From Laetmonice hystrix (Eukaryota), in assembly GCA_965235115.1 (NCBI GenBank), contig OZ249439.1, positions 23,994,001 to 24,058,000 on the forward strand: 64,000 bases of DNA, written 5' to 3'. A program made the position numbers and the translations under genes. The notes beneath the pieces are model-generated. The model saw only the letters and a list, made by a program, of their open reading frames with translations. It searched no databases and was not told the origin of the DNA. Shown in pieces: positions 382 to 24,300 of the stretch. The stretch's first letter is position 1, and each line of letters opens with the position of its first letter.

Positions 382-3300
382 ATTATTGAGACTACAAAGG
401 CGAACCGTTGCCGCCGTATGCACAGACAGAGATGTACTCGGGCCAACGACATGCAAATCAATAGCTCATATCATCTATGAGAACCCCTTTTAAAGGTTTT
501 CTATAATAAAAGGAGTTCAATCCAATACACATGGACACCTATAAATAAGAAAGTGATGGATCCACACTTAGGTGGATTCGATCCGATTGCCTCTGGCACA
601 GTTTAAGTCTCCCTATAGAGTGGTTTTAGGTACAATATTTCATTCCTGATCCTGATTCCTTGTCCGCTATATTTGGGAACTAACGGGTTAATGTCCACAT
701 TGAAATTCCTAACCTGATGTAGCCTAATGTATAAGGTGTCTTGTCAAAGGCAAAAGTCTCCAGATGGCAGCAGCTAAGGCATCATTTCGTGGTGCATCAA
801 ATTGATTGTGACGTTATTGTGGTTATTTAACAAAAAAAAAACTTGCCTCTAGGGTCAATGTCAAATGAGATCTTCTGAAAACGAATTTAGAAGGGGCAAG
901 TGTATTATTGTATGGCGTTTGGCTAGAGTTGACTTATTTGAAACACAGAATTGTTTTTTGCCTTATAATTTCCTTCATCTTGACCCTGTGATTTAGTTAT
1001 TGAATTAAGCTGCAGTTTTCTATTGCAGATTTCTATTTTATTGTCATGATTAATGAGAAAAACACAGCTTGAGAGAAACATCTAAAGGCGACCTTTCCCT
1101 CACAGGCAGCCACAAAATATCAATGACAGCGGGGAACGAATGATATAGAGCCCCTGATCGTCTAAATAAATCTGCGGTTAAACGCAGATTTAAAGCATTA
1201 TCCTTGCTAATCCCCAATCCCGGGAGAAAAAGCACCAAGGATTTTACATCCTGCCTTCCTGTGCCTTCCTGTGCACTGTACTGTGATGGAAATCCTCGTC
1301 CACCTGTCCGACAGTGTGCAATCCTTGTTACCAGGGCCTCTAAACATGATCACTTTACTCTGCATCACTTACACCACTTAGGACCTCGTGTTTCACGGAA
1401 TGGCCTTAGAACATGAAAGGACCGTGTCTTCTTAGCACAAAGATCAAAAGACTCGATGGGTCCGGTTGCGAATAAAAATATCACTTCATTGACTGTTTTT
1501 ATTTTGAAGATCAGGAGCTAAGACGCTGGTGGATTTATCGTATATCAAGCATATAATACTACTCAATAATTTATCGGCCAAGATTATATGCGATCTAATC
1601 TAAGGAAACAGTTGGGGTGGAGATAATGGAGATCATTTTGAGGCCTCGACTCGCTCCGTTCAGTGGCAGACTCGCAGACGCTGTCTGAACGACAGAGTGC
1701 CGCGACGCCTGACGGCGCCAGTACGCATGCGCAGTGGGAAAGATGACCGGGCAGGCCTGAAGAGTCGTGCTAATATGGCGATGGCATAGAACTAGCGACC
1801 GCTACCACTGATGTAACCCTGTGGTAAATCAGAATCTACTGCGGGAAATAACACCAAACTCGGGAAACGAAATTGAATTTGTCGTGATTTGTGTACGCAT
1901 GTGTCCTTTGTCCCAACTTATAAACCCGCGATCGCAAAATTGCTGTTCCAGAAGACTACCTTTATTTAAATGCGAACCCAAAAATATGTAGGCCTAGCTA
2001 TGTGTAGCAGACTGGCGTGTATCGTGTTCTAAACAAATCTTATCATAATGTATATATGTAAGAGTCTGATGTATGCTGTGCTTCATGTTGTAAAGGAAAA
2101 TAAATAAATAACTCAGCTCATTTGACTTTTGATATATTATATTGAATAAAAATACAAAACGCTTATAAATTAACGTCAGTATACAGATGTATCATCTTTG
2201 TACAGAGCATGGTCTGATAAATGACCACCACGGTTTCCCAGATGCGTGACGTAGACACAACACTCGGGTTGTAGTAATAATATACGACTAATGAGGCGAC
2301 GTCATCCTCTAGTTTCACGATCGGCCCCCAGGGGTCCTCCCTAATGCACATGTTGATGCGCCTATGTCGGCCCGACTTTATCGCACTGACCACAAACCTC
2401 AAAAGAACAGAGCTGTCACGTGACTAGCTTTGCGCGACAGACAGTCCTGACAGACAGGGGAGAGGAGAGAAAAAATGGAACAGCACCCATCCTGTATCAC
2501 ACGGGCGCATGACTGAGCATCACGTGGTCTTTGGGCAATGCACCAGTTGGCCTTTACTGTCAGTTCTCGTTGTCTACGTAATACGTCAACTATTATCGCT
2601 GAATCCATACACTACAGCACGTGATAGCACTGGATGAAGGGGGTAGCTCAGTTATAATCGGTTAGTCTTTCTGAACACGTGGAAACGCGGCCTTCACATT
2701 GACATAGTTACTTGGCACGTCGTACCAAGATTCTCTTGAGCGGACATGCGCAAAAGCGGTTAATGGCACGAGTCAGAAGCAATGTAGGAAGCCATTTGTC
2801 TAGAGCACCGTCTAGACCTTGCGTCTCCTAGGTGCTTCCCAAAACGGATTCACTCCTACCAAAGGACACGAGATCTACAAAAGTTCGACGGCAGATTTTT
2901 TTAGGGGGGGGGGGGGGGTGTATTATGATTTCTGTGATTTCTCGAGCGTTTAGAGAGGGGACCATATATAGGTCACAGTGTCAGCAGTTCCTCGCCTGGT
3001 ATTATGTCTACATTCGGTCAGTCTTTGTCGTAGTGACCTGTAAATAAGTCTTGACATTCTGTGGCCATTGCCAGAGCACCACCACACAGATCTGGAAAGC
3101 TCTCGTAGGATCTACACTGAAGCCAGTGATGTTGTATCATATGTCAATGTACACACAAGCACGGTGGGTGGGGCTTCGGGAATGAAATGGAGGCGATGGG
3201 AGAGCCGGCGGATACTACTTCAGTGCAGATGGTGCGCTGGGGCCGACTGTCAGAATATCTGTGTCTGCTTGGAGCCAGTGTAGGTTACTGGAGAAAGGAA

Positions 3301-5853
3301 CGGTTCCTCCATCTGAAGCGCTCCGGAGACGTTGCCGTCACAAAGGGGTTTCGTGTACATGCTTTCCTCCGGCACCTTCTGGAAGACAAACACACACATT
3401 GTACACAACGTGATTATATGTGGCCGCGGCAACTTACAGGCCAACATGGAGAAGTCAGCAACTTGAGCTCATTTGAAATGGTTCTCGCATAGCTGAATAT
3501 GAAACACGTGCCAACATGTTTGCAAAGCTAATAATATACGGGAGAATGCCACTTATAGCGCAGCGTCATCCCTGGGGGAAATTTCCCCCAAGTCAAATAC
3601 TCCACTGTCGGGAGTAAGTAATTTCACTGGAACAGCCAGCATGGTCAGCATGAAGACCGGAAGAGTAACACAGGGCATTCCTCCGTAATGCTGGGTGTTC
3701 CATTGAGATTACCTATTCCTGATAGTGGCCAAGAGAACTTAGAATATTTCCGCCAGGTCTGAAGCCCAGGTAATTGAGATTCTCCCGTATAATTGAATTA
3801 TGTTGGTGTGATCTTAGTTTTTTAGCTATGCAAAGATGAAACATTTCATTTTTATGTCCTAGAAGTTTCTTTTTTGTAATTCTCAGAAAGCCTGCTCTCT
3901 CTTTCTTTGGCAGACACAATAGCTATCTATGTTGTCAACATATTAAAGTAGGCTCTCATCAAAACTGCATATGGACTATTTGTTTTTGTATCTAAAGGAC
4001 ACCGGCCCTGATAATTACAGCCATATAGATAATCTGTACTAGGAAACGCAACGACATCAGTCTATTCTAATTGTAGCTAAATAGAATGGATGTAAGACTG
4101 CAAATGACAAGCGCAAAAAGCTTTGAAACTGAAGGAGGCTTGTTAACTGAGATGCTACTTCTTAAGAATCTGTAAGTTCAGAGGGAGATACCGTCTGATC
4201 AATAATGTATTCTCCGACTACTTGCGACTATAATCGTAGGGCGTGACTCTAGACTATATCATGACTGTGAGCCCAAGAAATGCGTATCTACTCTACCGAC
4301 TAAATCAAGGAAAAACCTTCGAGACGAAACGAACAATTGTCGTACTTTCTTAGTCTCACATGTGCACTGTTTTACAAAGGTACAAAGACATCTATAAACA
4401 TACATGCAGGTATGTTAATAGATGCATATTGACAACTATATACGCACATAAAGACAAGACTTACATTGAACCGTGTGTGTTATACAAATGTCTAATAAAA
4501 CAAACATCCTGTGTGTTTGGGTGTGAAACTTAATTCGCTTTGTTTTCGCTTTGGTTTTGCATTCCTCGTCTTTAGAGTGAGTATGTGTTTAGTGTGGCAT
4601 CCATTGCACCCCCTCCCCCAATATTAGCAATAGGATATTTATTTTTGTGACTGCTATTTGCTCCGTTTTCCATGATTGTCACTGTCACTGCCAGCTGTCA
4701 GTGTTCTATGTCTCAGGCAACATATGTTAGACTTTCTTTGTATTTTACGCAGCAAAAGAAAACAGTATTTCACCATTCTAATTTACATTGATACCTTCCA
4801 TTTCCTGTGTGCTATTCAGAACAGGGCTATTCAGCACAGTGACATAGGAAGAAAGAAATGATGTATGCAAAATTGAAAAAATCACCGTCGTTCCTGTAGC
4901 ATGGTACATCATTGTAGGGCTTTATACATATACCACAGATATTCTGTCCATCTCCACAATTTTTGATTTATCATTTTATTCTCTTGAAAATATAATATCG
5001 GGCTACCTTTAATCAATACCAAGGAAAAATATTTTTTTTAAATCGGATTTTTTTTCAACCTTTGCGTTTAAATGTTTATTCATTTTCGCTGTTTATATAT
5101 AAAAAAATATAAAAAAATATAAGGATTAAACAAACACGTTATTAGCAGTTTGGTCCATTTCACTGAATTACCTTCAGTCGTTCACATCATGGTCCCATTA
5201 TCCATTTACACAGCTATTTTAGGAGTCCGAGTAATTATGTGAATTTTTATAGCTCCAACTTCAAAAAGTTTTAATTAACAAACTAAAGAACTGCTCGTCT
5301 GTTCAACTGCAAGGAATATAGACCTATTAGCAAAGATCAATGTGGGATGACAGCTGCTGTTGTTTCGTAATTTTAGATTTCCAACGGAGGAAAATTATGC
5401 ATAATCTGTTAGAATTCTTCCGCGTCTCTGCATGGATAATAATTATCAGTATTAGGGCATCATTATAGAGTTTAGTTTTGCTTATTCTGGGTAGTTTTAG
5501 TTCAGACATGTAACAATAGTGAGCAAGAGCGTATAGAGACAGTCATCGGCATCCGTCCTTCACGTTACTTACACCAGAAACAACAGACTATGCGACTTGC
5601 ACTGTTCATGCACTCTTCACGTTATTGTGAAATGTCCGGGAATGATAAAAACTGTTCAACATGACATTGGAATGAAAATAAAGGATGGGAAGGAGAGAGA
5701 CATTTTCACAAGAAGTCACGAACAGGCCATCAATAACGAGAGCAGACAGATTACAGATTGGGATACTGTCCTTATCTTGTCTTTTGTTTCGCCCCATCGT
5801 CACGGTTCAGTGGGTTCGTTTTCCTTGGTTTGGCCATTTTTTAATGTTTGTTT

Positions 5854-6180: not shown

Positions 6181-6388
6181 CTATAACGAGTACGAGATCT
6201 TTACCCTATTTTTAGTCGCTTTCCGCCGCCGCTTAACTCGGTAGCAATATTCAAATAAAGACGCTCCGAGCGCTAGGACTACACCTGCGCCCAGAATAAT
6301 GAAAAGTCCCGCGACATCCTCGATGGAAATGGAATCTGTGGCCTGTGGTCGCGGCGGCGATGGCTTACACTTTCTGTTGTGAAACCAT
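6181..6388 (-). CDS. iGluR terminal coding exon: end of S2, M4 and short C-tail ending ...KISYSL*
   Basis: Acceptor tttgttgtttcag|A TGG, phase 2, completing R-W-F. M4 followed by EYCYR (AMPA EFCYK-like). Stop TAG at 6183-6181. A donor-like AGG|gtaaag at 6204 makes the exact 3' end uncertain. Confidence 0.9.
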
Positions 6389-9300: not shown

Positions 9301-12300
9301 TGGTATGTGGTCTGGTTGAGAGATTGCTATCACAATACCTTTGATGTTATAGAGGGCTGGTCCTATCCGCATGCTGCTTATTTAGTTCTTGGTTGGTCCT
9401 GGTTGCATCTATTACCTATCATTAGAGCAAAACAGGCGGTGGTTCTAACATATTTACTCTTTTGTGGAAATGACAAGTCCCCGGAAAAAGTCAAAACATG
9501 AAAATTAATGGTGTAAAAAATCCGCAAATACCGATATATTATGATAAATGTTGTATTTTTCCAGAGTGGAGGGCGTAGAGAACCCGATAGAAAGATGCCT
9601 TTGTGTTTTATTTCTGACAAGGACTGGGTATACGTCACTGTACACTGTACAGCGCCATGGCTCACGCAGGACAAAACAAGTTCTATCTTTATCAGGGTCA
9701 AAGACGAAAAAACTCTGACGTGAACAATTATTCTTTACCCGATTAACAGTGCCACTGCCATCTAGCCGTTTTAAAAAACCATCCCTTCCACGCTCGGAAA
9801 GGAGAATTGCTTTCTCCAATTGCCTGTCCTGATGCTAAGAGCTCAATGGGGGATTTCTTTGACAAGAAACGGTCCGTCTATATCAAAGGGTTAAGTTTCA
9901 CGACGCGTCACGTAACGGGGAAGGATGTTGGCACGGATGGGATCACCTTCGGGCACCTAGACACATTTCATGTCACGGAATATCAGAGGGCAAGCGGTAC
10001 TGATCTATAGTATATCACTGGTCGCCTTCCGACTACCAACGATTTTTATCCTAAGAACTACTGTCGTGTCGGTGACTGTCATGCAAAGAAGAGTCTGAAC
10101 ATGCCAGTTCGGACCCACACTTCAAAACAAATTATACCGATTGTGAAAGTAACAACCTTGATGCGAATGTTACCGCTAATTCAGCCTTCACGACCACTGC
10201 TTTATTGAACCATCAATTGGCAGCAGAATCAGATCTTACCTGTGCTCTAGCTCCTGTAGCTTGCCGTTTTCCCGTAGCCGCAGAATAGCAATGGACAGTT
10301 TATCACGATAGTGAGTGCCCTGCGGAACCCCTAGACCGTACTCTCGTAGTCCAAACGTGTGACCCACCTCGTAAAGGTCACACTGAACACTCGTACGTAA
10401 CCGGATTTGGTAAGTCTCCCACAAAAAGGCATAGTCTCCTTTGCTATTAGCTACACGCTGGAATCCTTGTTCGCTATCGTTCACCATACCCGACTGATCG
10501 CCAGAACCCATAGCGAACCACATCCGCTGAAAATGCGGCAGTTTGCTGTTCTCGAAGAAGGCACTCACGTGACTACCTCTCACGGTACCGTACGAGACGT
10601 GACCCTGCGTGGCGAGATCCTGAATGCTTTGTATAGGAGCAGTGAAGCGAAACACTGTCAAGAAAGCCGCTAGGTTAGCGGTGTAAGTCGATATCATAAT
10701 TATAGAAAACAGCCACATGGACCCGGCTAATATCCGACTCGAAATGGACCTTGGCACGATGTCTGTCACCCTCAGCACCATGGAGGCGAACGTGAACCAC
10801 AAACTGTCACTGGCACTGAGGCGATGTTTGGAGTTTTCGTTGCCGCTGCCAGGTGCCAGACGGTCAACAACGTAGAGTGTCATGCTGATGACAAGGAAGA
10901 CGACCACCATGAGCACCCACACGAAGAGGGACAGAGGACTGAGAAGATGAAACATGGAGTGCCGTTCCGAGTGTCGTCTCATTATGATGGAAGAGCCGGT
11001 CGTGAAGAACGGTTCGGTAAAGTCAATAACTTCCTTCCTATCCGAGGTAATGGCCAGGGGAGCTACGGCTAAGGAAGCGTTCTGAAAGAAAATTTGCAGG
11101 GGGATTCGTTCTGTGGTGGTGGATGATTATGTACATACGGGAAAGACAGTGAAACAGCCACGTCTTCAGCTGACCAAACCGCATGCATAGATCTACTCCC
11201 AGTGTTCCCTTAAACACTTTCAACCATTATGTAGGGGCTAGTGTATGTAATAAAACAGTTTTAAGAGGAATATGTTTGTACTTTTACATATAAGTAGGCC
11301 TAATATGAACTGTAGTTGATTCACATTATATCGTCAGTCAAAAATTCAAGACACAGAAAAATAAGTATTAAACAATAAACATTTTTCATTTAAAGCCATC
11401 CCAATTTTTTATGCCCAAGTCTACCTTTCTCTTTGACACGTCAACAGAACCATCACGACTAATGATGGCCAGCAAATAATAGGTTTGCACATCGAAAGAC
11501 TAAAACCTCCCCTCTTGGCTTTATTTTGACCTTTTCGACACACAGACATCTTTACCCCATTGAGCAGTTCGCCGATGACGCCCGTCCACGACCCCGTCGA
11601 CAGCTTGGAACCGTAGAGTCCATCTGGCGCGATATACAACTGGTACTTGAACTGTAGCAAGGCGGCAACGTCGGCAAGCAGGTCGATGGCGAACCCCTCA
11701 AACCGATCATTTCCCGACAAGAGATGTTGACCAGTTTTCAGCTTCACGAACGGGTCCTCCTGAAGATTCGACACATGCAGAAACATGTAAAAGGATTGAA
11801 AGCCGATCTCTCCCCTCCTCCTCCCCCGCCGTTCCCGAAATCACTCTCTAATGGTGCCAATTCAGAATGGAAATAACCGGGAATTTGAGCAAAGCCTCTT
11901 TTTTGCTTGGGGAGTCAGTGAGTCGTCAATTTCCTTATGGAGAAAGGTCACCGATGGAAAACTCGCCTCTAATATTGACGACGGGCGTTAATGTGAGGAA
12001 GGTCGGGTTTGGAGGCACACAGGCCTGGGAGCTGTATAAGGGCGGGCAGGCGAGCTCGGTCAACGACTCGTCAGATAGCCCACCGCATATATCCCCGAAT
12101 TGCGCCTCGGCATGGCAATATCAAGACACATAATTCCCACTCCAATCTGTACCGATAAGCTTCCACTAGACTGACCACAAAGATGTGGGTGAGTCTCCTA
12201 GTGTCCAAGGAGCGGGAGGGGAGGGGGTGACCCCCCTCCGAGCACTGATTACTCTGAAGAAGCTCCAGCTCCATTTCGGTAATGTATTATGATGACCTGA

Positions 12301-15300
12301 CGTTCTCCGACTGATATACAGTTTGTACTGCTTTTCACCTATCATCGTGTGATAACCTTTTAGAGATTATTACACGTAAAGGTATAGTATATTGCCATTT
12401 CTGATCATAATCTGAAATTAGGATTCGTATGGTGGTGCATGAAATCACGATTCCATTTTCTAGTAATCTGTCTGATCTTTTTCCTTTCAGATATACGGTA
12501 ACAAATTGCTAATAAGGTAGGCGTTTGAATTCTTGGATGTACCAATAAAGATAAGAGTACATGAATTCGAAATATACTGACTAAAGACAAAAAGTCTGGC
12601 TTTCAGTCGGATCAGTATTTGTATCACAATCATTGGCGGGTTTTTCCGTCACAGATTTCTATTCCGAACGAAGGCGACACTGCAGTGAGTATTAAAAACC
12701 TCGTTCTGATCCACATCATGTCAATTCTAAAAGTCGAATTACGTCCCACGCCACAAGATGTCTCAGTATTTGAATTACAGCTTCCCTGATTTTAGTGGTG
12801 TGTATGCTTGAATTCTTCGATTCGGTTGGGCCAAATGTGTTTGTCTTTTTAACTTTCCGAGTATCGTAAAGGTCCATGATTGCACAAATGATTGTTTGTG
12901 TGGAATTGCTTGTGACAGTAGCCATGCACCGTCGCGAATATTGCCACAAACCACTACACCCCCGCCCCATTAATGGCTCGAATAATTCACCAGACCAGAG
13001 TCAGGCTTGAACTTACCAGGACTGTCACAATCTGAACTATTTCCTTGCCAAGCGGATACGTAATCGGCTCCTCCCGGATGCTGCCCGGGTCCGTTATGCG
13101 CAGGCGCTTCAGCAGCGCCCTCTCGGAGGAATTCCAGAAACCCATCTGAAAAAGGGGGAAAAATGCATGACTCGGAATTAAAAACGACAGGACGTCAACA
13201 TTTGCGCGCGCAAGATAACCTAGCACAACACGAACCTTCATTCACACTCCCAACCGACTGGGCATGTCCATTGACTTGACGACTGACAGAGGGTTTCCGG
13301 GTCGTAAGACATTCATACCCCCTTTCCTCAAGTTAGGATTAAACCAGAGTTTGGTGTTGACTAGTCTGATAATTCTGGTTAAGAGAGATAAAATTAACGG
13401 TATTGTTCCATAACTTCCTTCTACTGCTGGGCTCATCATTTTCCTAACCAGTCCCACTTAATATTACATTCCAATTTACGCTCCAGTGCACATTCCATTG
13501 TTTAATGCAGGCATTAATTGAATGCGTTAGACCGACACGGTACATAAATAGTACACTCTAATCGGGTGAATTTGGTAATTAGTTTAAAACTTGTTTCCAA
13601 ACGTGCCTTCATTTTCTATGGCCCCCACAGGCGTGCGACTGGGAGCACGCCTCGGCTGCTGACTGCGCTGGGACCTGCGCCCGAGAATACGACATTGGGC
13701 GCGTCTTCTTTCTCATTGACTTCAATTACTAAGGCATTGACAGTTTCTAATTATCTTATAATGATATTCATGAGACTTCTGGATTCATCAGATGTGGTAT
13801 TGGCATACAAGCCTCCCTTTGGACCCAAGGCATATTGTTGCGCATCGCAGCCAAGTAACAATATATGTACATATTTCAGTGTTACTGTATATATAGGACA
13901 ATTACAATCGGCAAATTGGCCCAATGACAGACGTCTGGCATGCACAAGTAATCACAAGAAAACACTTCTGAGTCGGAAATCCTCTTGGGAACTCCCTTAA
14001 AATATTCCTTTCTCCCATGCACGTTGCCAGAACTAGGTTTAGGGATGTGTTTGCATAAGGAATGATATGTGAGGTGAGTGTACGTTTACATAGCCCTGCC
14101 TTGGTCGTAATCTTTCCGGCGATTCCACCTGAAGTGGCCAATAAGGTAATGCCATCCATATAGTTATCATCTCCTTGTGCTTGTGGATTAATCCTCTTAT
14201 ACACTACAGTCTCTCATCCTGATTAAATAGACAAACACCTATCTCTGTGCTGATTAACATGATCATATGCATCTACGAAAAAAGAAAATATTAAAAGCAT
14301 AATCAAGAAATGTAGAAAAATCGCACGCTGGCTATATCGAGGCTGAATGCCAAAGAGGCGCCAGAGATTGGACCCGTGAAGCGGATGGTGAGAGCGCCTA
14401 ACAAAAGTCTCTGAGATAATTATATAATGTTCGTATGGTTCTACAAGTTGTATGTTCATACCTGATACAGTCCAGCCATACCCAGGCCGTAAACTCCCAC
14501 TGTGTATCCCTGTCGACTCCCATCCTCAGCGAATGAAAGCCAGCCTGTCGCGCCGCTGTCTCCTATCTCAAATAGACAGAACAAACAAGTCCGTTAGTCA
14601 AATCCTCCTCGAAAATCCGACCCAAGTCGCTTCATTCATTCTGTTCGGTGGCCATTCACATCTGCCAGTTGCACTGTTTGCCAGTCAATGGATGGACATT
14701 GTGAATGGTAACACAGACAAGACAGTAGCTGTAAGTTTGAAGGAGTGGGGCTTTACTGGACCCGGAAGGGCAGTGACCTTAATAATCGCTATACTTAGTG
14801 TCCGGCACAGTCCAGATGAGGTGGCAGTAGAATATCGATTCGTGAAGGAAAAAGTCAAACGGGATTTAGTACGATATACACCTTAATATAGGAATTATAC
14901 TCCAGTTGCCGTATATATAGGAAAATACTACTTCGAACAAATGAAGTAATTCCAAAAAAAAACTTCGGTAGCGATTTATTTTACGCAATCAATACAGGAC
15001 AATGCATCAGTAAAAATAGCGTAAGCAGATAATAGTGGCATTAAGCCAGCGCGAACTGAACAGTAGGCCTAAAATATCCCTATGAGTTAACGTGGAACTC
15101 TTGTCTCTGTTGAGACGCAGACAAGAAGAGAAGAGCCATGTGCGTTTCAATTGTTCTTACTCGTATTGTCTGTTCCGACGTTCAGATCTCAACGAGGACA
15201 AACAACACACACTCTACAATGACATGATGATTATTTTATAAACATTGATAACCGGCAACTGCTGACTTCTCAATGAGAGGAGCGTGCTAGGGACATTGAA

Positions 15301-18300
15301 ACTCCTCCATCTGGATTCTCAATGAGAGGAGCGTGCTAGGGACATTGAAACTCCTCCATCTGGATTCTCAATGAGAGGAGCGTGCTAGGGACATTGAAAC
15401 TCCTCCATCCGGATTCTCAATGAGAGGAGCGTGCTAGGGACATTGAAACTCCTCCATCTGGATTCAATGAGAGGAGCGTGCTAGGGACATTGAAACTCCT
15501 CCATCTGGATTCTCAATGAGAGGAGCGTGCTAGGGACATTGAAACTCCTCCATCTGACTTCTCAATGAGAGGAGCGTGCTAGGGACATTGAAACTCCTCC
15601 ATCCGGATTCTCAATGAGAGGAGCGTGCTAGGGACATTGAAACTCCTCCATCCGGATTCTTAATGAGAGGAGCGTGCTAGGGACATTGAAACTCCTCCAT
15701 CCGGATTCTCAATGAGAGGAGCGTGCTAGGGACATTGAAACTCCTCCATCTGGATTCTCAATGAGAGGAGCGTGCTAGGGACATTGAAACTCCTCCATCC
15801 GGATTCTCAATGAGAGGAGCGTGCTAGGGACATTGAAACTCCTCCATCTGGATTCTCAATGAGAGGAGCGTGCTAGGGACATTGAAACTCCTCCATCTAG
15901 ATTATCAATGAGAGGAGCGTGCTAGGGACATTGAAACTCCTCCATCTGGATTCTCAATGAGAGGAGCGTGCTAGGGACATTGAAACTCCTCCATCTGGAT
16001 TCTCAATGAGAGGAGCGTGCTGGGGACATTGAAACTCCTCCATCTGGATTCTCAATGAGAGGAGCGTGCTGGGGACATTGAAACTCCTCCATCCGGATTC
16101 TCAATGAGAGGAGCGTGCTGGGGACATTGAAACTCCTCCATCCGGGTTCTCAATGAGAGGAGCGTGCTAGGGACATTGAAACTCCTCCATCCGGATTCTC
16201 AATGAGAGGAGCGTGCTAGGGACATTGAAACTCCTCCATCCGGATTCTCAATGAGAGGAGCGTGCTAGGGACATTGAAACTCCTCCATCCGGATTCTCAA
16301 TGAGAGGAGCGTGCTAGGGACATTGAAACTCCTCCATCCGGATTCTCAATGAGAGGAGCGTGCTAGGGACATTGAAACTCCTCCATCCGGATTCTCAATG
16401 AGAGGAGCTTGCTAGGGACATTGAAACTCCTCCATCCGGATTCTCAATGAGAGGAGCGTGCTAGGGACATTGAAACTCCTCCATCTGGATTCTCAATGAG
16501 AGCAGCGTGCTAGGGACATTGAAACTCCTCCATCTGGATTCTCAATGAGAGCAGCGTGCTATAGGGACATTGAAACTCCTCCATCCGGATTCTCAATGAG
16601 AGGAGCGTGCTAGGGACATTGAAACTCCTCCATCTGGATTCCAATACTGACCAATTGTTAGAGTTTTATCTTGGATACAATAAGTTGATCCACATGACCT
16701 TAAAGCAATGGATGATACAAATCCAAACCCTCCGTATCCAGAGCCGTATGTCTTGAAACCCACTGCTACTATCAACCCGTTGGTCCGGAATAGCAGTACT
16801 GTCTATCAGTGACATATTGCCAAGGTCGTTCGCATGCTCGTACCCTACCTCGGGCAGGGAGGGGGGGGGGGAGGCTCACAATATCGATGTTCTAATGGGG
16901 GCCAAAGCACGTCTTGAGGCCGTACAAACATACTCGCTTAACAGAACCGTTTTTTTTCTCAACTAATCACACTATATAGATTTGCAGTAAAACGTTGGTA
17001 AAAGCATGTACTCGCATTTACAAATTACATCTCTGTGGATCATCAATTCCTGTTTAAGGTTACTAGAATGATCTAGACTTCAAATCTAACTTCTTTCTAT
17101 TCGGAGAATCATTAAAGTAGCAAAGTATCATTGACGTTTGTCCAATACAAAGGTGTCGCCATATAGACCGTCTTCACACCAGATAATCTAGCTCATTTTT
17201 CACGAATTAAATGCACTACATTAAATGCATTATTGAAAAGGGAAAGCACATAGCCACCATATGGAAATTTTCATCAGTTTGATCGTCCCTCTTCGCCCCA
17301 CGAGCGGCTTAAAGGCAAGCTTACCTTATGAAGCGTCGCGTATATTGGCCCCTTGCCTATCCAATGACAGCTTCCGCGGACCCTGTGGTGGTGCTTAATT
17401 CCATGATACAAAGTCAGCAAGCTGTCGTAAGAATTTATGTATTCATTTCGCTCGAATGGCTTCGGGATATGGAGATCGGTTACGAAATTCTTCATGAGAC
17501 GGAAGGTTGTAAAGTTGATCTGGGTGTAGATGTAGCGGTCTAGGTCGTCTTGGCCTAGTGTCTGCAACAAATATGGTCCAGTTTAATTGTGAAATTATAC
17601 AATATTACACATTACAATTCTGCTCAACAGTGTGGTGTTTCTGACGGGGTATATGGCAGGTGATACACTAAATGCTTTGTCCCTCTGTATACATAGTTTA
17701 TCTGTGTGTTTGCGAGTGGGAAGTATGTTTGTGCAAAAGAAATAAATCATTTCTAGAAACTCCGACGATGGTCTCAGTGCTAAGGTCCCTGCAGGCACCG
17801 AAGAGCTGCATCATTCAGTGGAGTTTTCCCGAGGCAGTTGTCCGACCACGCTCAAACGTTTCATTCCAATGAAACATCATTCCAAAGGCACCCATCCCAA
17901 CACATGTCACCCACACATTTACAGAGGGCAAAGTAAAAAGTGGAGAATTAATACACCGAGTATTGTGTAATCCCCGCAGATATATCCACCTTAAAGCAGA
18001 AGTGATGACGTATAGCGCGCAATGCATCACGGGGGATTCTTATTATATCTGACAACCGGAAGCAGAAGGAGGCACATCTCTTCCGCCTTTCCGCTATCAA
18101 CGGGCGGGCATTCTGGCTACATTAAATTCAGCAAGGTGCTTGGCTTTGATGATGATGCTTAATATGAATCCCCCTTTCGATGTAATGCACCGTTTGGCGG
18201 AAGGCAACATCCCAGGGGCCAACAGCGATCTCGAAGATACGGTACAGTGGAATATAACACCCAGAGAACGAGCCAGGATGGCGGTCGTTATGGTTGTGGG

Positions 18301-21300
18301 CAGGCGTGAGAGGGACAAATGGCAGGTTTCGTGTAATTGACCTTCCCCTAATGATTTCTCCGCAGCAGAACGGAGTTTGTGGTCCTGGTGAAAGGTGACC
18401 CTCTCCCGACAAACTCACCAATCCGTGCACTTAAAGTAAACATTATATTATGTTGCTGCATGTATAAAATAATAGCAATATTGCCAGATATTACTAGATC
18501 TATGCGCTATTTTTACTCGGAAAGGGTACAGCAAACAGATACGATCTACCATTTTTCATCCACTTATTCCTCCATGTCCCTTGATGAAAGTCTCCATATT
18601 CTATCTTATATATATATATATATATTATATATATAACGTTAAATTCTCATAAACCGTACATGAACAAGTAACATCGATTTATCATGTGAGAATACGGTAT
18701 AAATAATCTTCCAAAGTTACAAAGAAGGTTGATGATATACGATACTTCAGCAAGCTCCAACTCGATCCAGCTCATGACCGGATGAATGTATAATACAATT
18801 GATGGAGCGCTTTCCTGTCATCTCATTGCCTCCGAGGCATCATCGTTCTCTTGCCAAGGAAAAAGCTATATTTTCAGCCACAGCGTTCGTGATATATGTC
18901 GTCCCTAGGTTTCTCACGACATCTTATCTCGATACCGGAAATACACCCTAGTCCAGCTGCGTCACATCACAAAGTATAACTGCTTACTATAAATAATTCC
19001 GATTTAATCCCATGAATCTTATCAAAGTTTTTGATGGTCATAGTCACCTTTTCATTTTGTTCTTTAAAATAATTATAGCGATCGTGCCGTATTTCTGGGT
19101 CCTTTAATGATGCGTGGTTGACAGTGAGTGTTATTTCTTAGACCCAGCGCCCATCAGTTATACTGCACTCTAAAGCCGTATTAAGGAGCCGACGGTGGAC
19201 ATCTCATGTAACTTTACGGTAATGTATATTCTCCGGAGCCCTAGTATCAAACTTTGCTGGATTTCAGAACCATATTGCGACCTTTAAGATGCTTTAGTAG
19301 TCAGTGAGGTGTTAATATGAATGTTACCGTATCGAACCAATTAGGTTAGTTTAAACATCTAGATGTTTCCCGCATTGATTGGTACAGACTTGGAGTCATG
19401 CTGGAGATCCAGGGGGTAAGTGCTCCGGGCACAGCCCTTTGTTTAGCATGTTTGCATGTGGAACATCAGAGCTGTCTGTCTGTCTATCAGAGGGTCTGTT
19501 CCCAAAGTGGCACCACTCAGTGTGAGCCAGGCGCTTCATCAAGATGTCGCCAGTGTTAGAATGGCGGGCCACAGAGGCTGGATGGCAGGGAGGGATGAGG
19601 GTGACGCCATCCATCAGCAGTGGTGGGCAGGCCAGTCGGTGGGTGGCTGGTGAGAGTGTAAGGGGAGAGTGTTGGCCCCAAAACCACCACTCCGTCCGTA
19701 CCTCATTATCCTGACAGGCGCCATGCGTGAGAATTGTAACACTAAATGCACCAGGATGATCAATAGAGTGTTAGCCGGTGTCACGCATGGGTGTGTTTGT
19801 ACGTATGCGTAGGACGGGATGTGGGGGGTGTGGGGGTGTGACGGACGGCCAAACCGACGGAGCACAAATATGACATGTGACATCCCAGCGGTAGAGTTAG
19901 ATAAAAAAAATATTTTCCGTCGCAATGTCAAATAATTGAACTTACAATTTATGTTGTCCATGAGACAGTTTCTTTTGTGAATATTGCATGATGGCGCAAG
20001 ATCGAGACGGTGGTGATCGCGATATGCTGGAGGCGTAACCGAGGGCATACTATCGGATTACATCATCGGGCCCTCGCACCGTTGTGTCATAATATTGTAA
20101 CCACAAGATCTAGACTCGAGCTATAGGAGTGCACTATGTTTTAATTATGTAAATTTTATCAAGAATTACTGTTAAATTAGCGGCGCCAGTATGGCTTAAT
20201 ATCCATGAGAATTTCCATTCCTCCTCACATTAGTCACGCTTGAATTTTTATCGAAGGTGTTCGGCCTGCACGGTTTCATCACAGATCTTGTATATAATTG
20301 GCGAGCAACAACACCTTTCCTATACAACTACACTTGACGCTTTCGGTGGTGGTTCTATGCAAGATAAACATATAGGCAGTGCCTAAATTAAATGATACGG
20401 GATGAAAAATACACACTAATCAGATTTGTTAAAGTTGCATTGAGAGCCGCTTCCTCTAATTCTGTAGTCATGGGCGGCTTAATCTGATTGAGCTCACAGG
20501 GTGTGATAGATTCGAAAGTCGATAAAAAGCTCTAATCGACGTAATTTATTTATTGAAGACCTTTATCTGAAACTCCACAGTACATCCGTAGTTAGATTCA
20601 TTATCAGCCCAAACTAGGTAATTATTCACTCGCACAATAAATATACCTGCGCCATATTCCTCCAGCTCAGACGTATGTGAGAACCTCCTCCAGTAATGCT
20701 GTATTTCAATCAGGAGGCGCCAGTGTCTTGAGTAGCGGACGTATACTTTATACTGTGCTGTATACCGGCTTGCTTGGCCACCTTGTTTTATATATACACC
20801 CGTTGCCATGGAGACCGCTACTCTCAGGCGTCTATCTGTGTGGTATACGATCTCGGACGTATATATACGTCAAGTTGTCGTCCTGCTGGCAGCGGGTTCC
20901 CCCCAGTAAGAGCCACATACAGCCAAGGCAGCGGCCTCTACTTCTATCCAATCACCTCTCCGCCGGAACTGTAATGTACTTCGACAGCTTGATGGAATCC
21001 AGCAACGAGGATCGGCCGTGTTCGGAACAATTGAAAAGACAGTTAATGAAGTTTCCTTTCCAATGATCGAGTCTTAATTGGATACCGTTCACAATGCACT
21101 AGTATAGAGGGCCAGGATGTGCGGTTTGACTACCGCTAATACCGATGCCCCCTTTGATAGATTCGACTTATTAGTCTGGCTCTATCCTGATTCATGGCTG
21201 TTTTCTGACCTCAATTTAACGGCACCGGATCCTGTGGTCACGTGTTGTAGGCGTATTGATTGCCCATGACGGACATTATATGTGATTCGGCGGGTAAAGA

Positions 21301-24300
21301 GAGACCACCAGGGCCTGCGGACGGCCGGGGCACCCTTGTGGTACTCCCCTTCCCAACCAGTAACAGGGCCCGGGAGGATTTCCTACAATCTTGCGGTTTT
21401 GTAAGCCAAGTTGATGGCTGTGTTTTTCTGTTATTTCTGCCCGCCCGATGAAAAAGCCAGGAGTTCTTGCGCTGAGACGTCGCTGTAGTATTAAGAGGTC
21501 TCGACCACTGAATGGCTCCATCTTCGCCGGCCAGGCGTTCATCACGGCAGGCAAAACGCTCCATTGCTCTAGAGACATAACTGCCTGTCCATTCTAATTG
21601 AAAATCGCCATCCATAACATGGCATTCATAGCGCAAAAAAAAACTTGATGGTTTATGTGCGAGACGGCAACATGGTCGACAGCCGACCTTCCGCAAGTCG
21701 TGCGCCAATTGGCAAACTGGCATGCAGTGAATGGGTACACACCGTGCTGTCGTGTTTAAGAACGTAATACGGCTAATAAGGCCGATATATGGCCTCGTTA
21801 CGGCCTCAAAAGAGGAAGGATGCCTCCAAAGGGGAAGTGGATAGCTCTGAGCAAACGTTTGCCGTTGCGCAGTTGTCGGGCAAATTAAGTTTCCGCACGA
21901 GTGAAAGATTAAAAAAAAGTCGTCCTATTTTGAAATCGATCGATCGGTTGTGCAACAGGACCCTATTGAGCAATGGCTTGCCATGGCCCAGGAGGGCAAT
22001 AGGTTTTGAACCTTGATGCCAAACTTCGAACAGCCTTTTCGAGGAGAAGCTATCCTTAAACCATTAAAACTCCACACACTCACTCGTAACATAAATCTAT
22101 ACGAAATAAAACGGCGTTCAAAGAGGCTAGATGACAGTTTGAAAAACATTCTCTCACAAAAACTTTTATTTCTACAGCTCGAGAGGACAATTAACGTTAA
22201 AAAGGGCAAAGAAGAAACGTGGGCCGCATAAGAGAGGGAGTTGTCTCTCGCAACTTTCTATAAGCGAATGGCAACAAAAAGAATATAATATTACGACCGC
22301 TGCCTTTCTAGCTCCAGCCTTCCTAATCAGAACCATTTATCAAGGCTGGCTATACTATAATGTAGGAACAGAAGCGTTGTTAGCAGATGATATCATCTGA
22401 AATGTTTTATCATAGCCAGACAAAAGCGACGGTGCTGGCTGCCTTAAGCTGATGTATGTTTATAGAGAACAGCACCTGTTCGCGGGGGAGTCTATAATCG
22501 TTGAGAGGACGCCATCTTCTACGGTTACAGGCGCTGACGTCGAGTGACAGTTTACGTTTGAACTTAGTGCCACTCACTTCAACCAATCACGGTACCGACA
22601 CCAGACTCACTTCAACCAATCACGGTACCGACACCAGACTCACTTCAACCAATCACGGCACCGACACCAGACTCACTTCAACCAATCACGGTACCGACAC
22701 CAGACTCACTTCAACCAATCACGTACCGACACCAGACTCACTTCAACCAATCACGGTACCGACACCAGACTCACTCCAACCAATCACGGTACCGACACCA
22801 GACTCACTTCAACCAATCACGTACCGACACCAGACTCACTTCAACCAATCACGGTACCGACACCAGACTCACTTCAACCAATCACGGTACCGACACCAGA
22901 TGGCGTCTGCCAATCAGGAAGTTTCATAGANNNNNNNNNNNNNNNNNNNNNNNNNNNNNNNNNNNNNNNNNNNNNNNNNNNNNNNNNNNNNNNNNNNNNN
23001 NNNNNNNNNNNNNNNNNNNNNNNNNNNNNNNNNNNNNNNNNNNNNNNNNNNNNNNNNNNNNNNNNNNNNNNNNNNNNNNNNNNNNNNNNNNNNNNNNNNN
23101 NNNNNNNNNNNNNNNNNNNNTTCCGGCCTTGAGTCTACTTTGGTCCTTGAAGAGAAACTAGAGACTTGTGATGGAAAGACCAGACATGTCGGTGCAGGAT
23201 CTTTGGAACGTCTCATGCTCGCTCCAGTGACGGTGTATGAGCTTATATATTATACATAACATTTAGTGTGTTCACTATACTATAAGGCCACACAACAATT
23301 CTCACATAGGATGGCACAGTCGTGGTCCTTCATAGTATCGTCCAATAGTCTAAGGCGCCAAGCAACCATCGTTTGTCTCAGAAACATCACGTCATTCAGG
23401 AGGAATCAAAGGAGAGATCAGGTTCACTTTAAAAAAATTAACTTCCTTGGTCGATATTCAATCGACTTATTCCTCTACCAGCCCCCTGAGCGATGTTCAT
23501 GACAAATGTTGCTCTTTCATTTCTCAAAGAACCTTCCGTGTACGAAATGAAAGAGATAGTAGATCTCACGAGACTTGGCAAAACGTGAACAAAAGGCAAG
23601 GGTCCAAATAAAAGGGCAGTTTGTCATTCCTTCTATCTCTATTCAAGACCTTCCTTCGACGGAGGATTCCCATGGATTTTGGCCCTGTCTAATAAAATGC
23701 ATATGGCCTTTCCGAGCCTTTGAGAAGCGGCAACCTGGGTGTAGGACGAGCAAAGCCAATTGAGCGCAGCCCGGACCGAGTGTCAATAAACAGTTCTGGC
23801 GTCGCTCTCAGAGCTCTCCTATGGACAGACAGATCAAGCTTCGCAACCTGCTTGCCGTGAAATGCAATCCGTAAATTGACTCTTCACCATGGCACAAATT
23901 ATGGCCATCGACCTGTTCCGAGTGGCATCAAACGCTTGCGCATATGACAAGGCGTACAAATTGGAAGTCCGAGTTGAATTGAAGTTGGCGGGCAGGAGCC
24001 GGATGTCACGTGGTGTGTTCAAAGGGTCTGTTACGACATGGCGTGGCGTGATCAGAGGGTTGGATTAACAACCGCTGTATGGTCACTTGGATGGGGGTGA
24101 TCGCTCTGATTGAGGTCATTTCCTCCCAGTCGGTTGGGTTTAACTGTAGCACTATTGCCGTATATATAGTGCCTTGGTGGAAAAGAGGTGTGGTATAGGG
24201 CAGACTAGACGAGTCATCCATCAGACTTACATGAGGTGGGGGGTGGGTGGGTGGGGGGGGGGGGGGGGTTCGTTTTCTCATCAATTCCCATATACCCGTC

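What the first reader, a model, noticed from the sequence alone, without database searches (positions are those of the whole stretch)
10413..11039. Ligand pocket is glycine/D-serine-like, not glutamate-like, with an unusual His
Seen: the S1 Arg is kept (APLAITSDR, Arg at 11037-11039; Ala as in GluK2 APLAIT). The S2 segment is YGTVRG-S-H-V (10566-10574) versus GluA2 G653-S654-T655, and AFL-W-E (10416-10421) versus L704-E705. Established: Val at the 655-equivalent and Trp at the 704-equivalent are the GluN1/GluD features that exclude glutamate's gamma-carboxylate. Those receptors have Asp rather than Glu at 705 and small Ser/Ala rather than His at 654. Inference: this is a hybrid W-E/H-V pocket, probably not glutamate-gated. 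It may bind glycine, D-serine, another small ligand, or be pH/metal modulated.
Basis: partly seen in the sequence, partly recalled or inferred. Interest (0 to 1): 0.7.

Follow-up and report, generated by a model that had tools for sequence, protein, structure and literature searches.

The report
Delta-like glutamate-receptor subunit, unusual ligand pocket
The window holds an intact, transcribed and strongly conserved glutamate-receptor-family gene of a spiralian invertebrate whose ligand pocket (Ser-His-Val plus Trp-Glu) resembles GABA/glycine/D-serine-type receptors more than glutamate-type ones, so it is a conserved new variant of a known, uncharacterised receptor group and its real ligand still has to be measured.

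Summary
On the minus strand the S1 Arg (11037-11039), S-H-V (10566-10574) and W-E (10416-10421) sit at GluA2 positions 485, 653-655 and 704-705. The alignment to GluK2/GluA2 is ungapped, and an AlphaFold model starts helix F at the His.

The gene is real and constrained. It has ATD, S1, M1-M3, S2, M4 and tail exons from about 31340 to 3250. One splice is seen in an RNA-like contig. dN/dS is 0.044 against an orthologue from another species that keeps every pocket residue.

In a 122-sequence tree the gene falls in a spiralian-only AKDF clade (100/100) whose pocket is Delta-like (S-x-V/I plus W-D). Whether that clade is sister to Delta or to AMPA/kainate is unresolved (AU p 0.53).

The His is a subfamily trait, present in 7 of 11 members of a subclade that also carries Leu-Arg at the pore Q/R site; Gln is common in the next relatives. 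W-E is a lineage-specific D-to-E change that amphioxus Delta paralogues also show.

A non-glutamate agonist is plausible. The claim is not provable from sequence, because published mutagenesis shows these motifs predict ligand poorly. There is no support for pH or metal modulation.

Verdict: new variant of a known kind, moderate interest.

The parts
10240..11081 (-). Large coding exon: end of S1 (APLAITSDR), M1, pore loop M2, M3 (STYTANLAAFLTV) and most of S2, including both lower-lobe motifs
   Evidence: Translation. Pfam Lig_chan 9.9e-31 and Lig_chan-Glu_bd 9.2e-09. GluK2 8.1e-64. Acceptor cag at 11084-11082 and donor gtaaga from 10239. 92% amino-acid and 82% nucleotide identity to orthologue L016.
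11556..11759 (-). S1a exon (EDPFV...GELLNG) carrying the E402 and Y450 equivalents (Glu 11757-11759, Phe 11691-11693)
   Evidence: Pfam Lig_chan-Glu_bd 1.1e-18. tblastn hits. Splice signals read. The join ...ELLNG|NASLAV... matches relatives.
6205..6388 (-). Exon with the end of S2 (RWFHNRKC, second Cys of the LBD disulphide pair) and M4
   Evidence: 92% identical in the orthologue. The donor at 6205 is confirmed by a spliced contig of run X4.
3250..3378 (-). Last coding exon (KVPEES...TQIF, stop at 3252-3250)
   Evidence: The X4 contig runs from 6205 directly into 3378-3349. Acceptor ...cttccag and reading frame. 85% nucleotide identity to the orthologue.
13017..31340 (-). Amino-terminal-domain exons, approximate limits: 31340-31089, 27464-27255, 26276-26205, 17549-17403, 14557-14462, 13154-13017, and probably 16998-16882. 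The 5' end with the signal peptide was not found.
   Evidence: Collinear matches to a profile of full-length relatives, profile positions 79-395. Four of them coincide with blocks conserved at 74-84% in L016.
11037..11039 (-). S1 Arg (GluA2 R485 equivalent), the ligand-carboxylate anchor. Ala at 11052-11054 is the T480 equivalent and Pro at 11058-11060 the P478 equivalent.
   Evidence: The orthologue keeps Arg with a synonymous codon, AGG versus AGA.
10566..10574 (-). Alpha-F motif S-H-V (GluA2 G653-S654-T655 equivalents)
   Evidence: Identical in orthologues P0154 and P0155. S-H-V or S-H-I is found in 7 of 11 members of the subclade.
10416..10421 (-). Beta10/alpha-I motif W-E (GluA2 L704-E705 equivalents). 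Gln at 10407-10409 is the M708 equivalent and Tyr at 10338-10340 the Y732 equivalent.
   Evidence: Glu is kept in the orthologue through a synonymous change, GAG versus GAA. Sister groups have W-D.
10770..10775 (-). Pore-loop Leu (Q/R site) and Arg (+1) in S-M-V-L-R-V-T-D
   Evidence: L-R is shared by 10 of the 11 members of the subclade. Both codons differ synonymously in the orthologue (CTG/CTC, AGG/CGG).
10540..10598 (-). 59-nt block of perfect nucleotide identity with the orthologue, covering the S-H-V codons and the exon's only two GTRAG[TA] donor-like motifs. Its cause is unexplained.
   Evidence: 0 of 5000 shuffles reach 59 nt (mean longest run 24.6). One search gives the motifs.

Best explanation
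Shown. The window encodes a complete-looking, transcribed iGluR subunit (ATD, S1, M1-M3, S2, M4, short tail) under strong purifying selection. It belongs to a spiralian-specific clade of the AMPA/kainate/Delta/Phi (AKDF) group. Inside that clade it sits in a subclade marked by Leu-Arg at the pore Q/R site and, mostly, His in the alpha-F motif.

Shown. Its ligand-binding domain keeps the parts that hold an amino acid. These are the S1 Arg for the carboxylate, an acidic residue at 705 and Glu at 402 for the amine, the aromatic lid (Phe 450, Tyr 732) and the disulphide cysteines. The lower lobe is S-H-V plus W-E instead of the G-S/A-T plus L/M-E of glutamate-selective AMPA/kainate receptors.

Inferred. 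The subunit is therefore most likely gated, or at least bound, by a small amino acid without a distal carboxylate, and not by glutamate. Candidates are GABA, glycine, D-serine, alanine or a similar molecule. GABA and glycine/D-serine are the leading candidates by analogy with Delta-type and other S-x-V/W-D receptors.

Inferred. The His, and the Gln or Glu found in relatives, would act as a hydrogen-bonding side chain pointing into the sub-pocket that holds the ligand's side chain. The D-to-E change moves the amine-binding carboxylate about one methylene further into the cleft. Which ligand fits cannot be read from the sequence.
For: Gene reality:
- A collinear exon set was recovered.
- GT-AG junctions were read.
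- A contig of run X4 joins 6205 to 3378 exactly at the predicted donor and acceptor.
- dN/dS is 0.044 at dS about 1.17 over 409 codons against orthologue locus L016. The values are 0.03-0.05 for S1, TMD, S2 and M4 taken separately.
- Pocket residues are kept through synonymous codon changes.

Placement:
- In the careful ML tree (122 rows, GluN3 outgroup) the spiralian clade has 100/100 support, the 20-row clade 100/99, the L-R subclade 100/99 and this gene with its orthologues 100/100.
- Delta has 99/97 and AMPA+kainate 100/99.

Pocket:
- The table shows R, E402 and Y732 retained.
- It shares S at 653, a hydrophobic residue at 655, W at 704 and F at 450 with the Acanthaster Delta sequence (P0221), which matches the published description of the GABA-gated receptor.
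- It is unlike the G-A/S-T plus M/L-E of GluK2- and AMPA-type rows.

Literature:
- All glutamate-selective receptors in the published alignment have Gly at the first alpha-F position, and the non-glutamate ones have mostly Ser.
- GST-to-SSV or SAV in GluA2 drastically lowers glutamate potency and raises glycine/D-serine potency.
- Invertebrate Delta receptors that gave currents are best activated by GABA.
- A placozoan AKDF receptor with a bulky polar middle residue (S-E-A) is activated by glycine, D-serine, alanine and GABA, and E-to-S at that residue lowers alanine and/or glycine activity.
Against: - Motif-to-ligand rules are unreliable. S-Q-P occurs in both a glycine-selective and a glutamate/aspartate-responding receptor.
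- W-to-L, S-to-G and L-to-T in starfish Delta did not change its selectivity.
- Glu at 705 is the AMPA/kainate state, and a protonatable His could replace the Thr hydroxyl as partner for a distal carboxylate.
- No member of the spiralian clade has been characterised. The one protostome Delta candidate tried (oyster) gave no currents.
- The Leu-Arg pore and, in the orthologue, changes inside the normally invariant SYTANLAAF gate raise the possibility that the subunit does not form a conventional homomeric channel.
Confidence: 0.6

Rival explanations
1. It is still an acidic-amino-acid (glutamate or aspartate) receptor. The Glu at 705 binds the alpha-amine as in AMPA/kainate receptors, and the His supplies the polar or cationic contact for the distal carboxylate that Thr 655 supplies elsewhere.
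For: Glu at 705 is the state of all 120-odd AMPA/kainate-type rows. Nematostella 5500937, with alpha-F S-Q-P, responds to glutamate and aspartate and not to glycine. G674S in GluA2 does not lower glutamate potency. The starfish Delta receptor still responds to millimolar glutamate.
Against: The protein has Ser at 653, Val at 655 and Trp at 704 together. GST-to-SSV/SAV in GluA2 drastically lowers glutamate potency. Every relative in the clade has the W-D/F-D Delta-type state, so W-E is a recent single change on a non-glutamate-like background.
Confidence: 0.2
2. The subunit is not an agonist-gated homomeric channel. It would work only as a modulatory or obligate heteromeric partner, perhaps with the paralogue about 77 kb away, or mainly as a non-conducting ligand-binding or adhesion protein like vertebrate GluD.
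For: Leu at the Q/R site and Arg at +1 are unlike the Q-Q of Delta and AMPA/kainate pores. The orthologue has Pro and Val inside the SYTANLAAF gate motif. The neighbouring paralogue L002 has lost the S1 Arg, as tuning or partner subunits often have. Wild-type vertebrate GluD and oyster GluD gave no ligand-gated currents.
Against: TMD dN/dS of 0.05 shows the membrane domain is as constrained as the LBD. The +4 Asp and the rest of M3 are intact. Invertebrate Delta receptors of deuterostomes and acoels are active channels. This rival is compatible with the pocket reading and is not an alternative to it.
Confidence: 0.15
3. The His makes the site a proton or metal (Zn2+) sensor, with ligand binding or gating switched by pH or metal ions.
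For: The only support is the chemistry of an imidazole next to the ligand carboxylate site, and its conservation in 7 of 11 subclade members.
Against: The same position is Gln, Glu, Ser, Ala, Gly or Tyr in the nearest relatives, which fits a general polar contact. No second conserved His, Cys or Asp partner was identified, and no precedent was found in the papers read (no 'histidine' in PMC13648236).
Confidence: 0.08
4. The odd residues are an artefact: a pseudogene, an assembly error or a misalignment.
For: None was found.
Against: dN/dS is 0.044. Pocket and pore residues are identical in two orthologues and kept through synonymous changes. Three DNA runs cover the exon with no variant at the pocket codons. 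A spliced RNA-like contig exists. The alignment is ungapped and the structure model agrees with it.
Confidence: 0.01

Closest known systems
Delta iGluRs: vertebrate GluD1/GluD2 (bind D-serine/glycine; GluD1 also GABA-sensitive) and the GABA-gated invertebrate Delta receptors of starfish, acorn worm and acoel (PMC10861852)
   Same: It shares Ser at the first alpha-F position, a hydrophobic third residue, Trp at 704, Phe at 450, the retained Arg 485 and Glu 402, and an ...ITSDR... S1 strand. A tree with Delta and the spiralian clade held together is as good as the free tree (lnL +1.48, AU p 0.53). Published gene trees place protostome relatives at the base of Delta.
   Different: It has Glu instead of Asp at 705, His instead of Ser/Ala at 654, and a Leu-Arg pore instead of Gln-Gln. 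Monophyly with Delta is not supported in the free tree, where the alternative gets 58/64. Profile scores are about equal for Delta (408 bits) and AMPA/kainate (425 bits).
Glycine/D-serine-binding NMDA subunits GluN1 and GluN3 (alpha-F S-S-V, beta10/alpha-I W-D)
   Same: The lower-lobe pattern is S-x-V plus Trp (PMC13648236).
   Different: It is not in the NMDA group; GluN3 sequences were the outgroup, on a long branch. It has Glu where they have Asp and His where they have Ser.
Kainate receptor GluK2
   Same: GluK2 is the best match among solved structures (8.1e-64, about 42% identity). It shares the identical APLAIT strand with Ala at the T480 position, and Glu at the 705 equivalent.
   Different: GluK2 has G-A-T and M-E where this protein has S-H-V and W-E. 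The AMPA+kainate clade excludes this gene at 100/99. A best PDB hit to GluK is not diagnostic, because the S2/M4 region of a starfish Delta receptor also hits GluK first.
Trichoplax AKDF receptor 19383 (alpha-F S-E-A; W-Y in the wild type, W-D in the ligand-gated mutant; responds to glycine, D-serine, alanine, GABA; PMC13648236)
   Same: It is an AKDF receptor with Ser first, a bulky polar residue in the middle of alpha-F and Trp at 704. The middle residue contributes to agonist action.
   Different: It is a placozoan lineage with Glu instead of His and Ala instead of Val. It was not in my tree.
Amphioxus 'delta-1-like' paralogues (XP_019635244.1; P0021/P0233)
   Same: These are the only other W-E found, sitting inside the Delta clade with S-S-L.
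   Different: The D-to-E change is independent, since they lie in a different clade. They have no His and a Gln-Gln pore.

Membership tests
Ionotropic glutamate receptor superfamily, AKDF (non-NMDA) group | Lig_chan and Lig_chan-Glu_bd domains, an S1-M1-M2-M3-S2-M4 order, the SYTANLAAF gate, the LBD cysteine pair and an ATD | tested here: met
   Pfam hits. The gene is ingroup to the GluN3 outgroup at 100/100.
Delta iGluR family | Forms one clade with bona fide Delta receptors to the exclusion of AMPA/kainate | tested here: inconclusive
   The free careful tree puts the spiralian clade with AMPA/kainate at 58/64. The constrained Delta+spiralian tree is 1.48 lnL better than the quick free tree, AU p 0.53. 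No vertebrate GluD sequence could be fetched for the tree.
Delta iGluR family | Lower-lobe pocket S-S/A-L/V plus W-D | tested here: not met
   The protein has S-H-V and W-E. In the Delta rows, 20 of 28 have S-S-L and the rest are close variants, and 25 of 28 have W-D.
Delta iGluR family | Gln-Gln at the pore Q/R and +1 sites | tested here: not met
   It has Leu-Arg, against Q-Q in 27 of 28 Delta rows.
AMPA / kainate receptors | Membership of the AMPA+kainate clade, with G-S/A-T plus L/M-E glutamate-type motifs | tested here: not met
   The clade of 49 rows excludes it at 100/99. The motifs differ at four of five positions.
NMDA glycine-site subunits (GluN1/GluN3) | Membership of the NMDA clade | tested here: not met
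   The genome's own GluN3 exon (79% identical to the Capitella protein that Ramos-Vicente et al. list as GluN3A-B) and other GluN3 rows form the outgroup.
Spiralian Delta-like AKDF clade (uncharacterised; nemertean, annelid and mollusc members), L-R-pore subclade | Clade membership, S/T-x-V/I/T plus W/F-D-type pocket, and Leu at the Q/R site | tested here: met
   Clade support values are 100/100, 100/99 and 100/99. It departs only by E for D at 705.
Amino-acid-binding competent LBD | Arg 485, an acidic residue at 705, Glu 402, and aromatic residues at 450 and 732 are retained | tested here: met
   The actual binding of any ligand is not testable with these tools.

The most novel reading that the evidence does not exclude
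The S-H-V/W-E pocket together with the Leu-Arg selectivity filter defines a functionally new class of spiralian iGluR. It would be gated by a transmitter outside the glutamate/glycine/D-serine/GABA set, or would have altered ion selectivity because of the filter Arg. The 59-nt ultraconserved block over the S-H-V codons might mark RNA-level recoding or alternative splicing that changes the pocket. For example, A-to-I editing of AGU to GGU (Ser to Gly) or CAC to CGC (His to Arg) would alter it.
Probability: 0.12. Interest if true: 0.75.

Novelty: new variant of a known kind. Interest (0 to 1): 0.35.

Why it matters
Which ligands gate the many non-mammalian iGluRs is an active question. Recent work found GABA-, glycine-, alanine- and aspartate-gated members and showed that pocket motifs predict ligand only loosely. 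This gene adds three things:
- a conserved, selectively constrained natural variant (His in alpha-F, Trp-Glu in beta10/alpha-I);
- a paralogue that has lost the S1 Arg;
- a subfamily-wide Leu-Arg pore.

All three lie in the spiralian branch, for which there are no functional data and whose relation to Delta receptors is disputed. The gene is a good, cheap candidate for oocyte recordings and H-to-S/Q and E-to-D swaps, which would extend the existing 'natural mutagenesis' series. It does not overturn anything known.

Tried and rejected
- Pseudogene or artefact: rejected.
L-R is shared by 10 subclade members and kept in the orthologue through synonymous changes.
- Best PDB hit as a class label: rejected as uninformative, because a starfish Delta S2/M4 fragment also hits GluK first.
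- Profile scoring against Delta and AMPA/kainate HMMs: ambiguous, 408 versus 425 bits.
- Looking up the Capitella relative (CAPTEDRAFT_169825) in the Ramos-Vicente tables: it is not in their set.
- Looking for the oyster GluD sequence or accession in the Rosano supplement: not recoverable, so I could not test whether the clade here is their 'protostome Delta'.
- Vertebrate GluD, GluN1, Phi and Epsilon references: they did not come back from the protein searches, so they are absent from the tree.
- RNA runs: none is on record for this organism. Only one small run, X4, behaves like RNA, and it does not cover the S-H-V codons.
- RNA-structure explanation of the ultraconserved block: the local fold has z 0.73, there is no long inverted-repeat partner, and no conserved intronic block lies beside the exon.
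The upper lobe is therefore incomplete, and no coordinates or docking were available.
- Earlier scan notes by words gave nothing relevant to this gene.
Full report
**Observation.** The finding lies in a large minus-strand exon (11081-10240) of an animal ionotropic glutamate receptor gene.
- The exon reads ...NASLAVAPLAITSDRKEV..., with Arg at 11037-11039.
- ...VSYGTVRGSHVSAFF... has S at 10572-10574, H at 10569-10571 and V at 10566-10568.
- ...DYAFLWETYQ... has W at 10419-10421 and E at 10416-10418.
- phmmer aligns the exon to GluK2 and GluA2 structures at 1e-63 to 1e-57, without gaps and with top posterior marks through all three motifs. GluK2 reads APLAIT / G-A-T / M-E at the same columns.
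- An AlphaFold2 model of the exon (S2 part pLDDT 80-93) starts a helix exactly at the His, with the Ser as N-cap. It ends a strand at W-E just before the next helix. This matches the 'alpha-F-GST' and 'beta10/alpha-I-LE' positions as described for GluA2 in PMC13648236.

**Gene model.** The gene is real and functional-looking.
- A profile of full-length relatives finds a collinear set of minus-strand exons. The ATD pieces lie at 31340-31089, 27464-27255, 26276-26205, 17549-17403, 14557-14462 and 13154-13017. The S1a exon is 11759-11556, the large exon 11081-10240 and the M4 exon 6388-6205.
- Splice signals are canonical.
- Of four public runs from one sample, three are DNA, since they cover the introns. 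The fourth is small and holds a contig that runs from 6287-6205 straight into 3378-3349. That is a splice from the predicted donor to an acceptor ...cttccag, opening a last exon that ends ...TQIF-stop at 3252-3250. The same run has a contig over 10250-10507, which includes the W-E codons.
- No run is formally on record as RNA, so expression evidence is thin but positive.

**Selection.**
- A protein search found exon-sized orthologues at 92% and 89% identity (P0154, P0155).
- The DNA of the first (locus L016, an ENA assembly) is 82% identical in exons and mostly unalignable in introns.
- Over 409 codons, Nei-Gojobori dN/dS is 0.044 at dS about 1.17. The values are 0.03-0.05 for S1, M1-M3, S2 and M4 taken separately.
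- All pocket and pore residues are identical in both orthologues.
- The S1 Arg (AGG/AGA), the Glu at 705 (GAG/GAA), and the pore Leu (CTG/CTC) and Arg (AGG/CGG) are kept through synonymous differences.
- This excludes a pseudogene, an assembly error, or the 'compensated micro-frameshift' that another first-stage note proposed for the pore.

**Family placement: data set.**
- The best cluster representatives in a 1.8-billion-protein library are only 41-48% identical. They are spiralian: nemerteans Tubulanus and Lineus, molluscs Pecten and Plakobranchus, annelids Owenia and Capitella.
- The genome's GluN3 exon is 79% identical to Capitella CAPTEDRAFT_24092, so the animal is probably an annelid.
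- I built a 122-row, 422-column ML tree (LG+C20+F+G4) with four groups of rows. The first is the near relatives. The second is Delta receptors of echinoderms, hemichordates, amphioxus and acoels. The third is AMPA/kainate rows. The outgroup is GluN3.
- The Delta rows include the Acanthaster protein, whose residues match the published GABA-gated AcaGluD: V at 480, S-S-L and W-D.

**Family placement: result**.

| Clade | Rows | Support (UFBoot/SH-aLRT) |
|---|---|---|
| Delta | 28 | 99/97 |
| AMPA+kainate | 49 | 100/99 |
| Spiralian-only clade holding this gene | 39 | 100/100 |
| 20-row clade within it | 20 | 100/99 |
| 11-row subclade | 11 | 100/99 |
| This gene with its orthologues | 3 | 100/100 |

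- The order of the three big clades is unresolved. The free tree joins spiralian with AMPA/kainate at 58/64. A tree constrained to Delta+spiralian is 1.48 log-likelihood units better than the quick free tree (AU p 0.53).
- The literature shows the same instability. Protostome relatives are 'earliest branching within Delta' in one study. In another they fall either with Delta or with cnidarian AKDF, depending on the method. An earlier survey reported Delta as absent from annelids and did not include the Capitella member found here.
- Profile scores are also equivocal: 408 bits for Delta and 425 for AMPA/kainate. The best-PDB-hit criterion is uninformative, since a starfish Delta S2/M4 fragment also hits GluK first.

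**The pocket in context**.

| Group | Alpha-F motif | Beta10/alpha-I | Pore (Q/R, +1) |
|---|---|---|---|
| AMPA/kainate-type rows | G-S/A-T | L/M/I-E | Q-Q |
| Delta rows | S-S-L | W-D | Q-Q |
| Spiralian clade | S/T-x-V/I/T | W-D (32 of 39) | diverse |

- The middle alpha-F residue in the spiralian clade is G, Q, H, A, Y, R or E.
- His at the middle position occurs in 7 of about 200 aligned sequences, all inside the 11-row subclade. Ten members of that subclade also share Leu-Arg at the pore Q/R and +1 sites.
- The next relatives often have Gln, and Capitella has Glu. The His is therefore a conserved subfamily trait, interchangeable over time with other hydrogen-bonding side chains. It is not a one-off.
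- W-E is found only in this gene and its orthologues, and independently in an amphioxus Delta paralogue. It is a single D-to-E step on a W-D background, and it has since been held by selection.
- The upper lobe keeps Glu 402, Pro 478 and Arg 485. It has Phe at 450, as in several Delta rows, and Ala at 480, as in GluK2.

**Likely mechanism.** Two parts are shown, and the ligand class is inferred.
- Shown: the domain has everything needed to clamp an amino acid (Arg for the carboxylate, acidic residues for the amine, aromatic lid, disulphide).
- Shown: it lacks the Gly and Thr that make room for and bind glutamate's gamma-carboxylate in AMPA/kainate receptors.
- Published data give this weight. 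All glutamate-selective receptors in the Wang et al. alignment have Gly at the first alpha-F position and the non-glutamate ones mostly Ser. GST-to-SSV/SAV in GluA2 drastically lowers glutamate potency and raises glycine/D-serine potency.
- Invertebrate Delta receptors with S-S-L/W-D are GABA-gated. A placozoan AKDF receptor with S-E-A responds to glycine, D-serine, alanine and GABA, and its middle Glu contributes to that.
- I therefore infer a small agonist without a distal carboxylate, with GABA and glycine/D-serine as leading candidates. My confidence is about 0.6.
- The same papers caution against more. S-Q-P occurs in both a glycine-selective and a glutamate-responding receptor. Single swaps in the starfish Delta receptor do not change its selectivity. 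[quoted passage not shown]
- A glutamate/aspartate reading, with His as carboxylate partner and Glu 705 as in AMPA/kainate, stays open at about 0.2.
- Nothing supports a pH or metal switch beyond the chemistry of imidazole.
- The Leu-Arg pore, the altered gate motif in the orthologue (IPTYTVNLAAF) and a neighbouring paralogue without the S1 Arg make heteromeric or non-canonical channel function a live possibility.

**An unexplained extra.** Against a background of 153 differences in 840 nt, the two orthologues share 59 nt of perfect identity at 10540-10598. One difference follows, then 22 more identical bases.
- None of 5000 shuffles that keep codon-position classes reach 59 nt; the mean longest run is 24.6.
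- The block covers the S-H-V codons and contains the exon's only two consensus donor-like motifs, ACC|GTGAGA and CAC|GTGAGT. The paralogue lacks both.
- I found no strong local RNA fold, no long inverted partner and no conserved intronic block, and no RNA reads cover the block.
- A splicing signal or an RNA-editing substrate are candidates. I could test neither.

**Verdict.** This is a conserved new pocket-and-pore variant within a known but functionally uncharacterised spiralian branch of the AKDF receptors. It is a good bench target of moderate interest, and not a new kind of system.

Noticed in passing
window 10770-10775 (pore loop S-M-V-L-R-V-T-D, 10761-10781): The pore has Leu at the Q/R site and Arg at +1. 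This is a family trait and not a local frameshift. L-R is shared by 10 of the 11 subclade members at 40-50% identity, and Leu at the Q/R site by most of the 20-row clade. Both codons differ synonymously in the orthologue. The effect on conductance or selectivity is unknown.
   Followed up: partly
L002 (G000:C4:23926704-23927576, + strand, about 77 kb from this exon): The nearest paralogue (47-50% identical; S-H-V, W-D, pore L-R-T) has Leu in place of the S1 Arg (ITSDLEEV) and an Arg at the T480 position (GPIRIT). A second subclade member, P0159, has His at the Arg position. Part of the subfamily may have given up canonical carboxylate binding. No close orthologue of L002 was available to check conservation.
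   Followed up: partly
window 10540-10598 (plus 10517-10538): A 59-nt run of perfect nucleotide identity with the orthologue, at dS about 1.2, covers the S-H-V codons. It contains two GTGAG donor-like motifs. 0 of 5000 shuffles reach this length, and the cause is unknown.
   Followed up: partly
L016:10040-10879 (orthologue of the large exon): The orthologue reads IPTYTVNLAAFLTV where the window has ISTYTANLAAFLTV. These are two replacements inside the normally invariant SYTANLAAF gate motif of M3.
   Followed up: no
L025 (G000:C2:5590032-5590349), L032 (G000:C6:280784-280939), L026 (G000:C1:56839867-56840088), L013/L027 (G000:C5:4288411-4288629): The same genome carries several other iGluR exons. 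L025 is GluN3-like (79% to Capitella CAPTEDRAFT_24092). L032 is GluN1-like (...SYTANLAAFLVLDRPE...). L026 is GluN2-like (...AAFMITKEDY...). The last locus resembles IR25a, judged from memory only. Two further Delta-like paralogues lie on C4 (L003, L004).
   Followed up: partly
window 10502 (+ strand C>T; also 10425 and 10437): Allelic differences appear within the sample's runs. 10425 and 10437 are synonymous. 10502 changes Gly to Ser in the variable GSGDQSG loop of S2. No variant lies at a pocket codon.
   Followed up: partly
window 8077-8087: Contigs of run X1 break at a poly-G tract, leaving loose ends of 11-14 G. This is probably a homopolymer sequencing or assembly break in the intron.
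   Followed up: no
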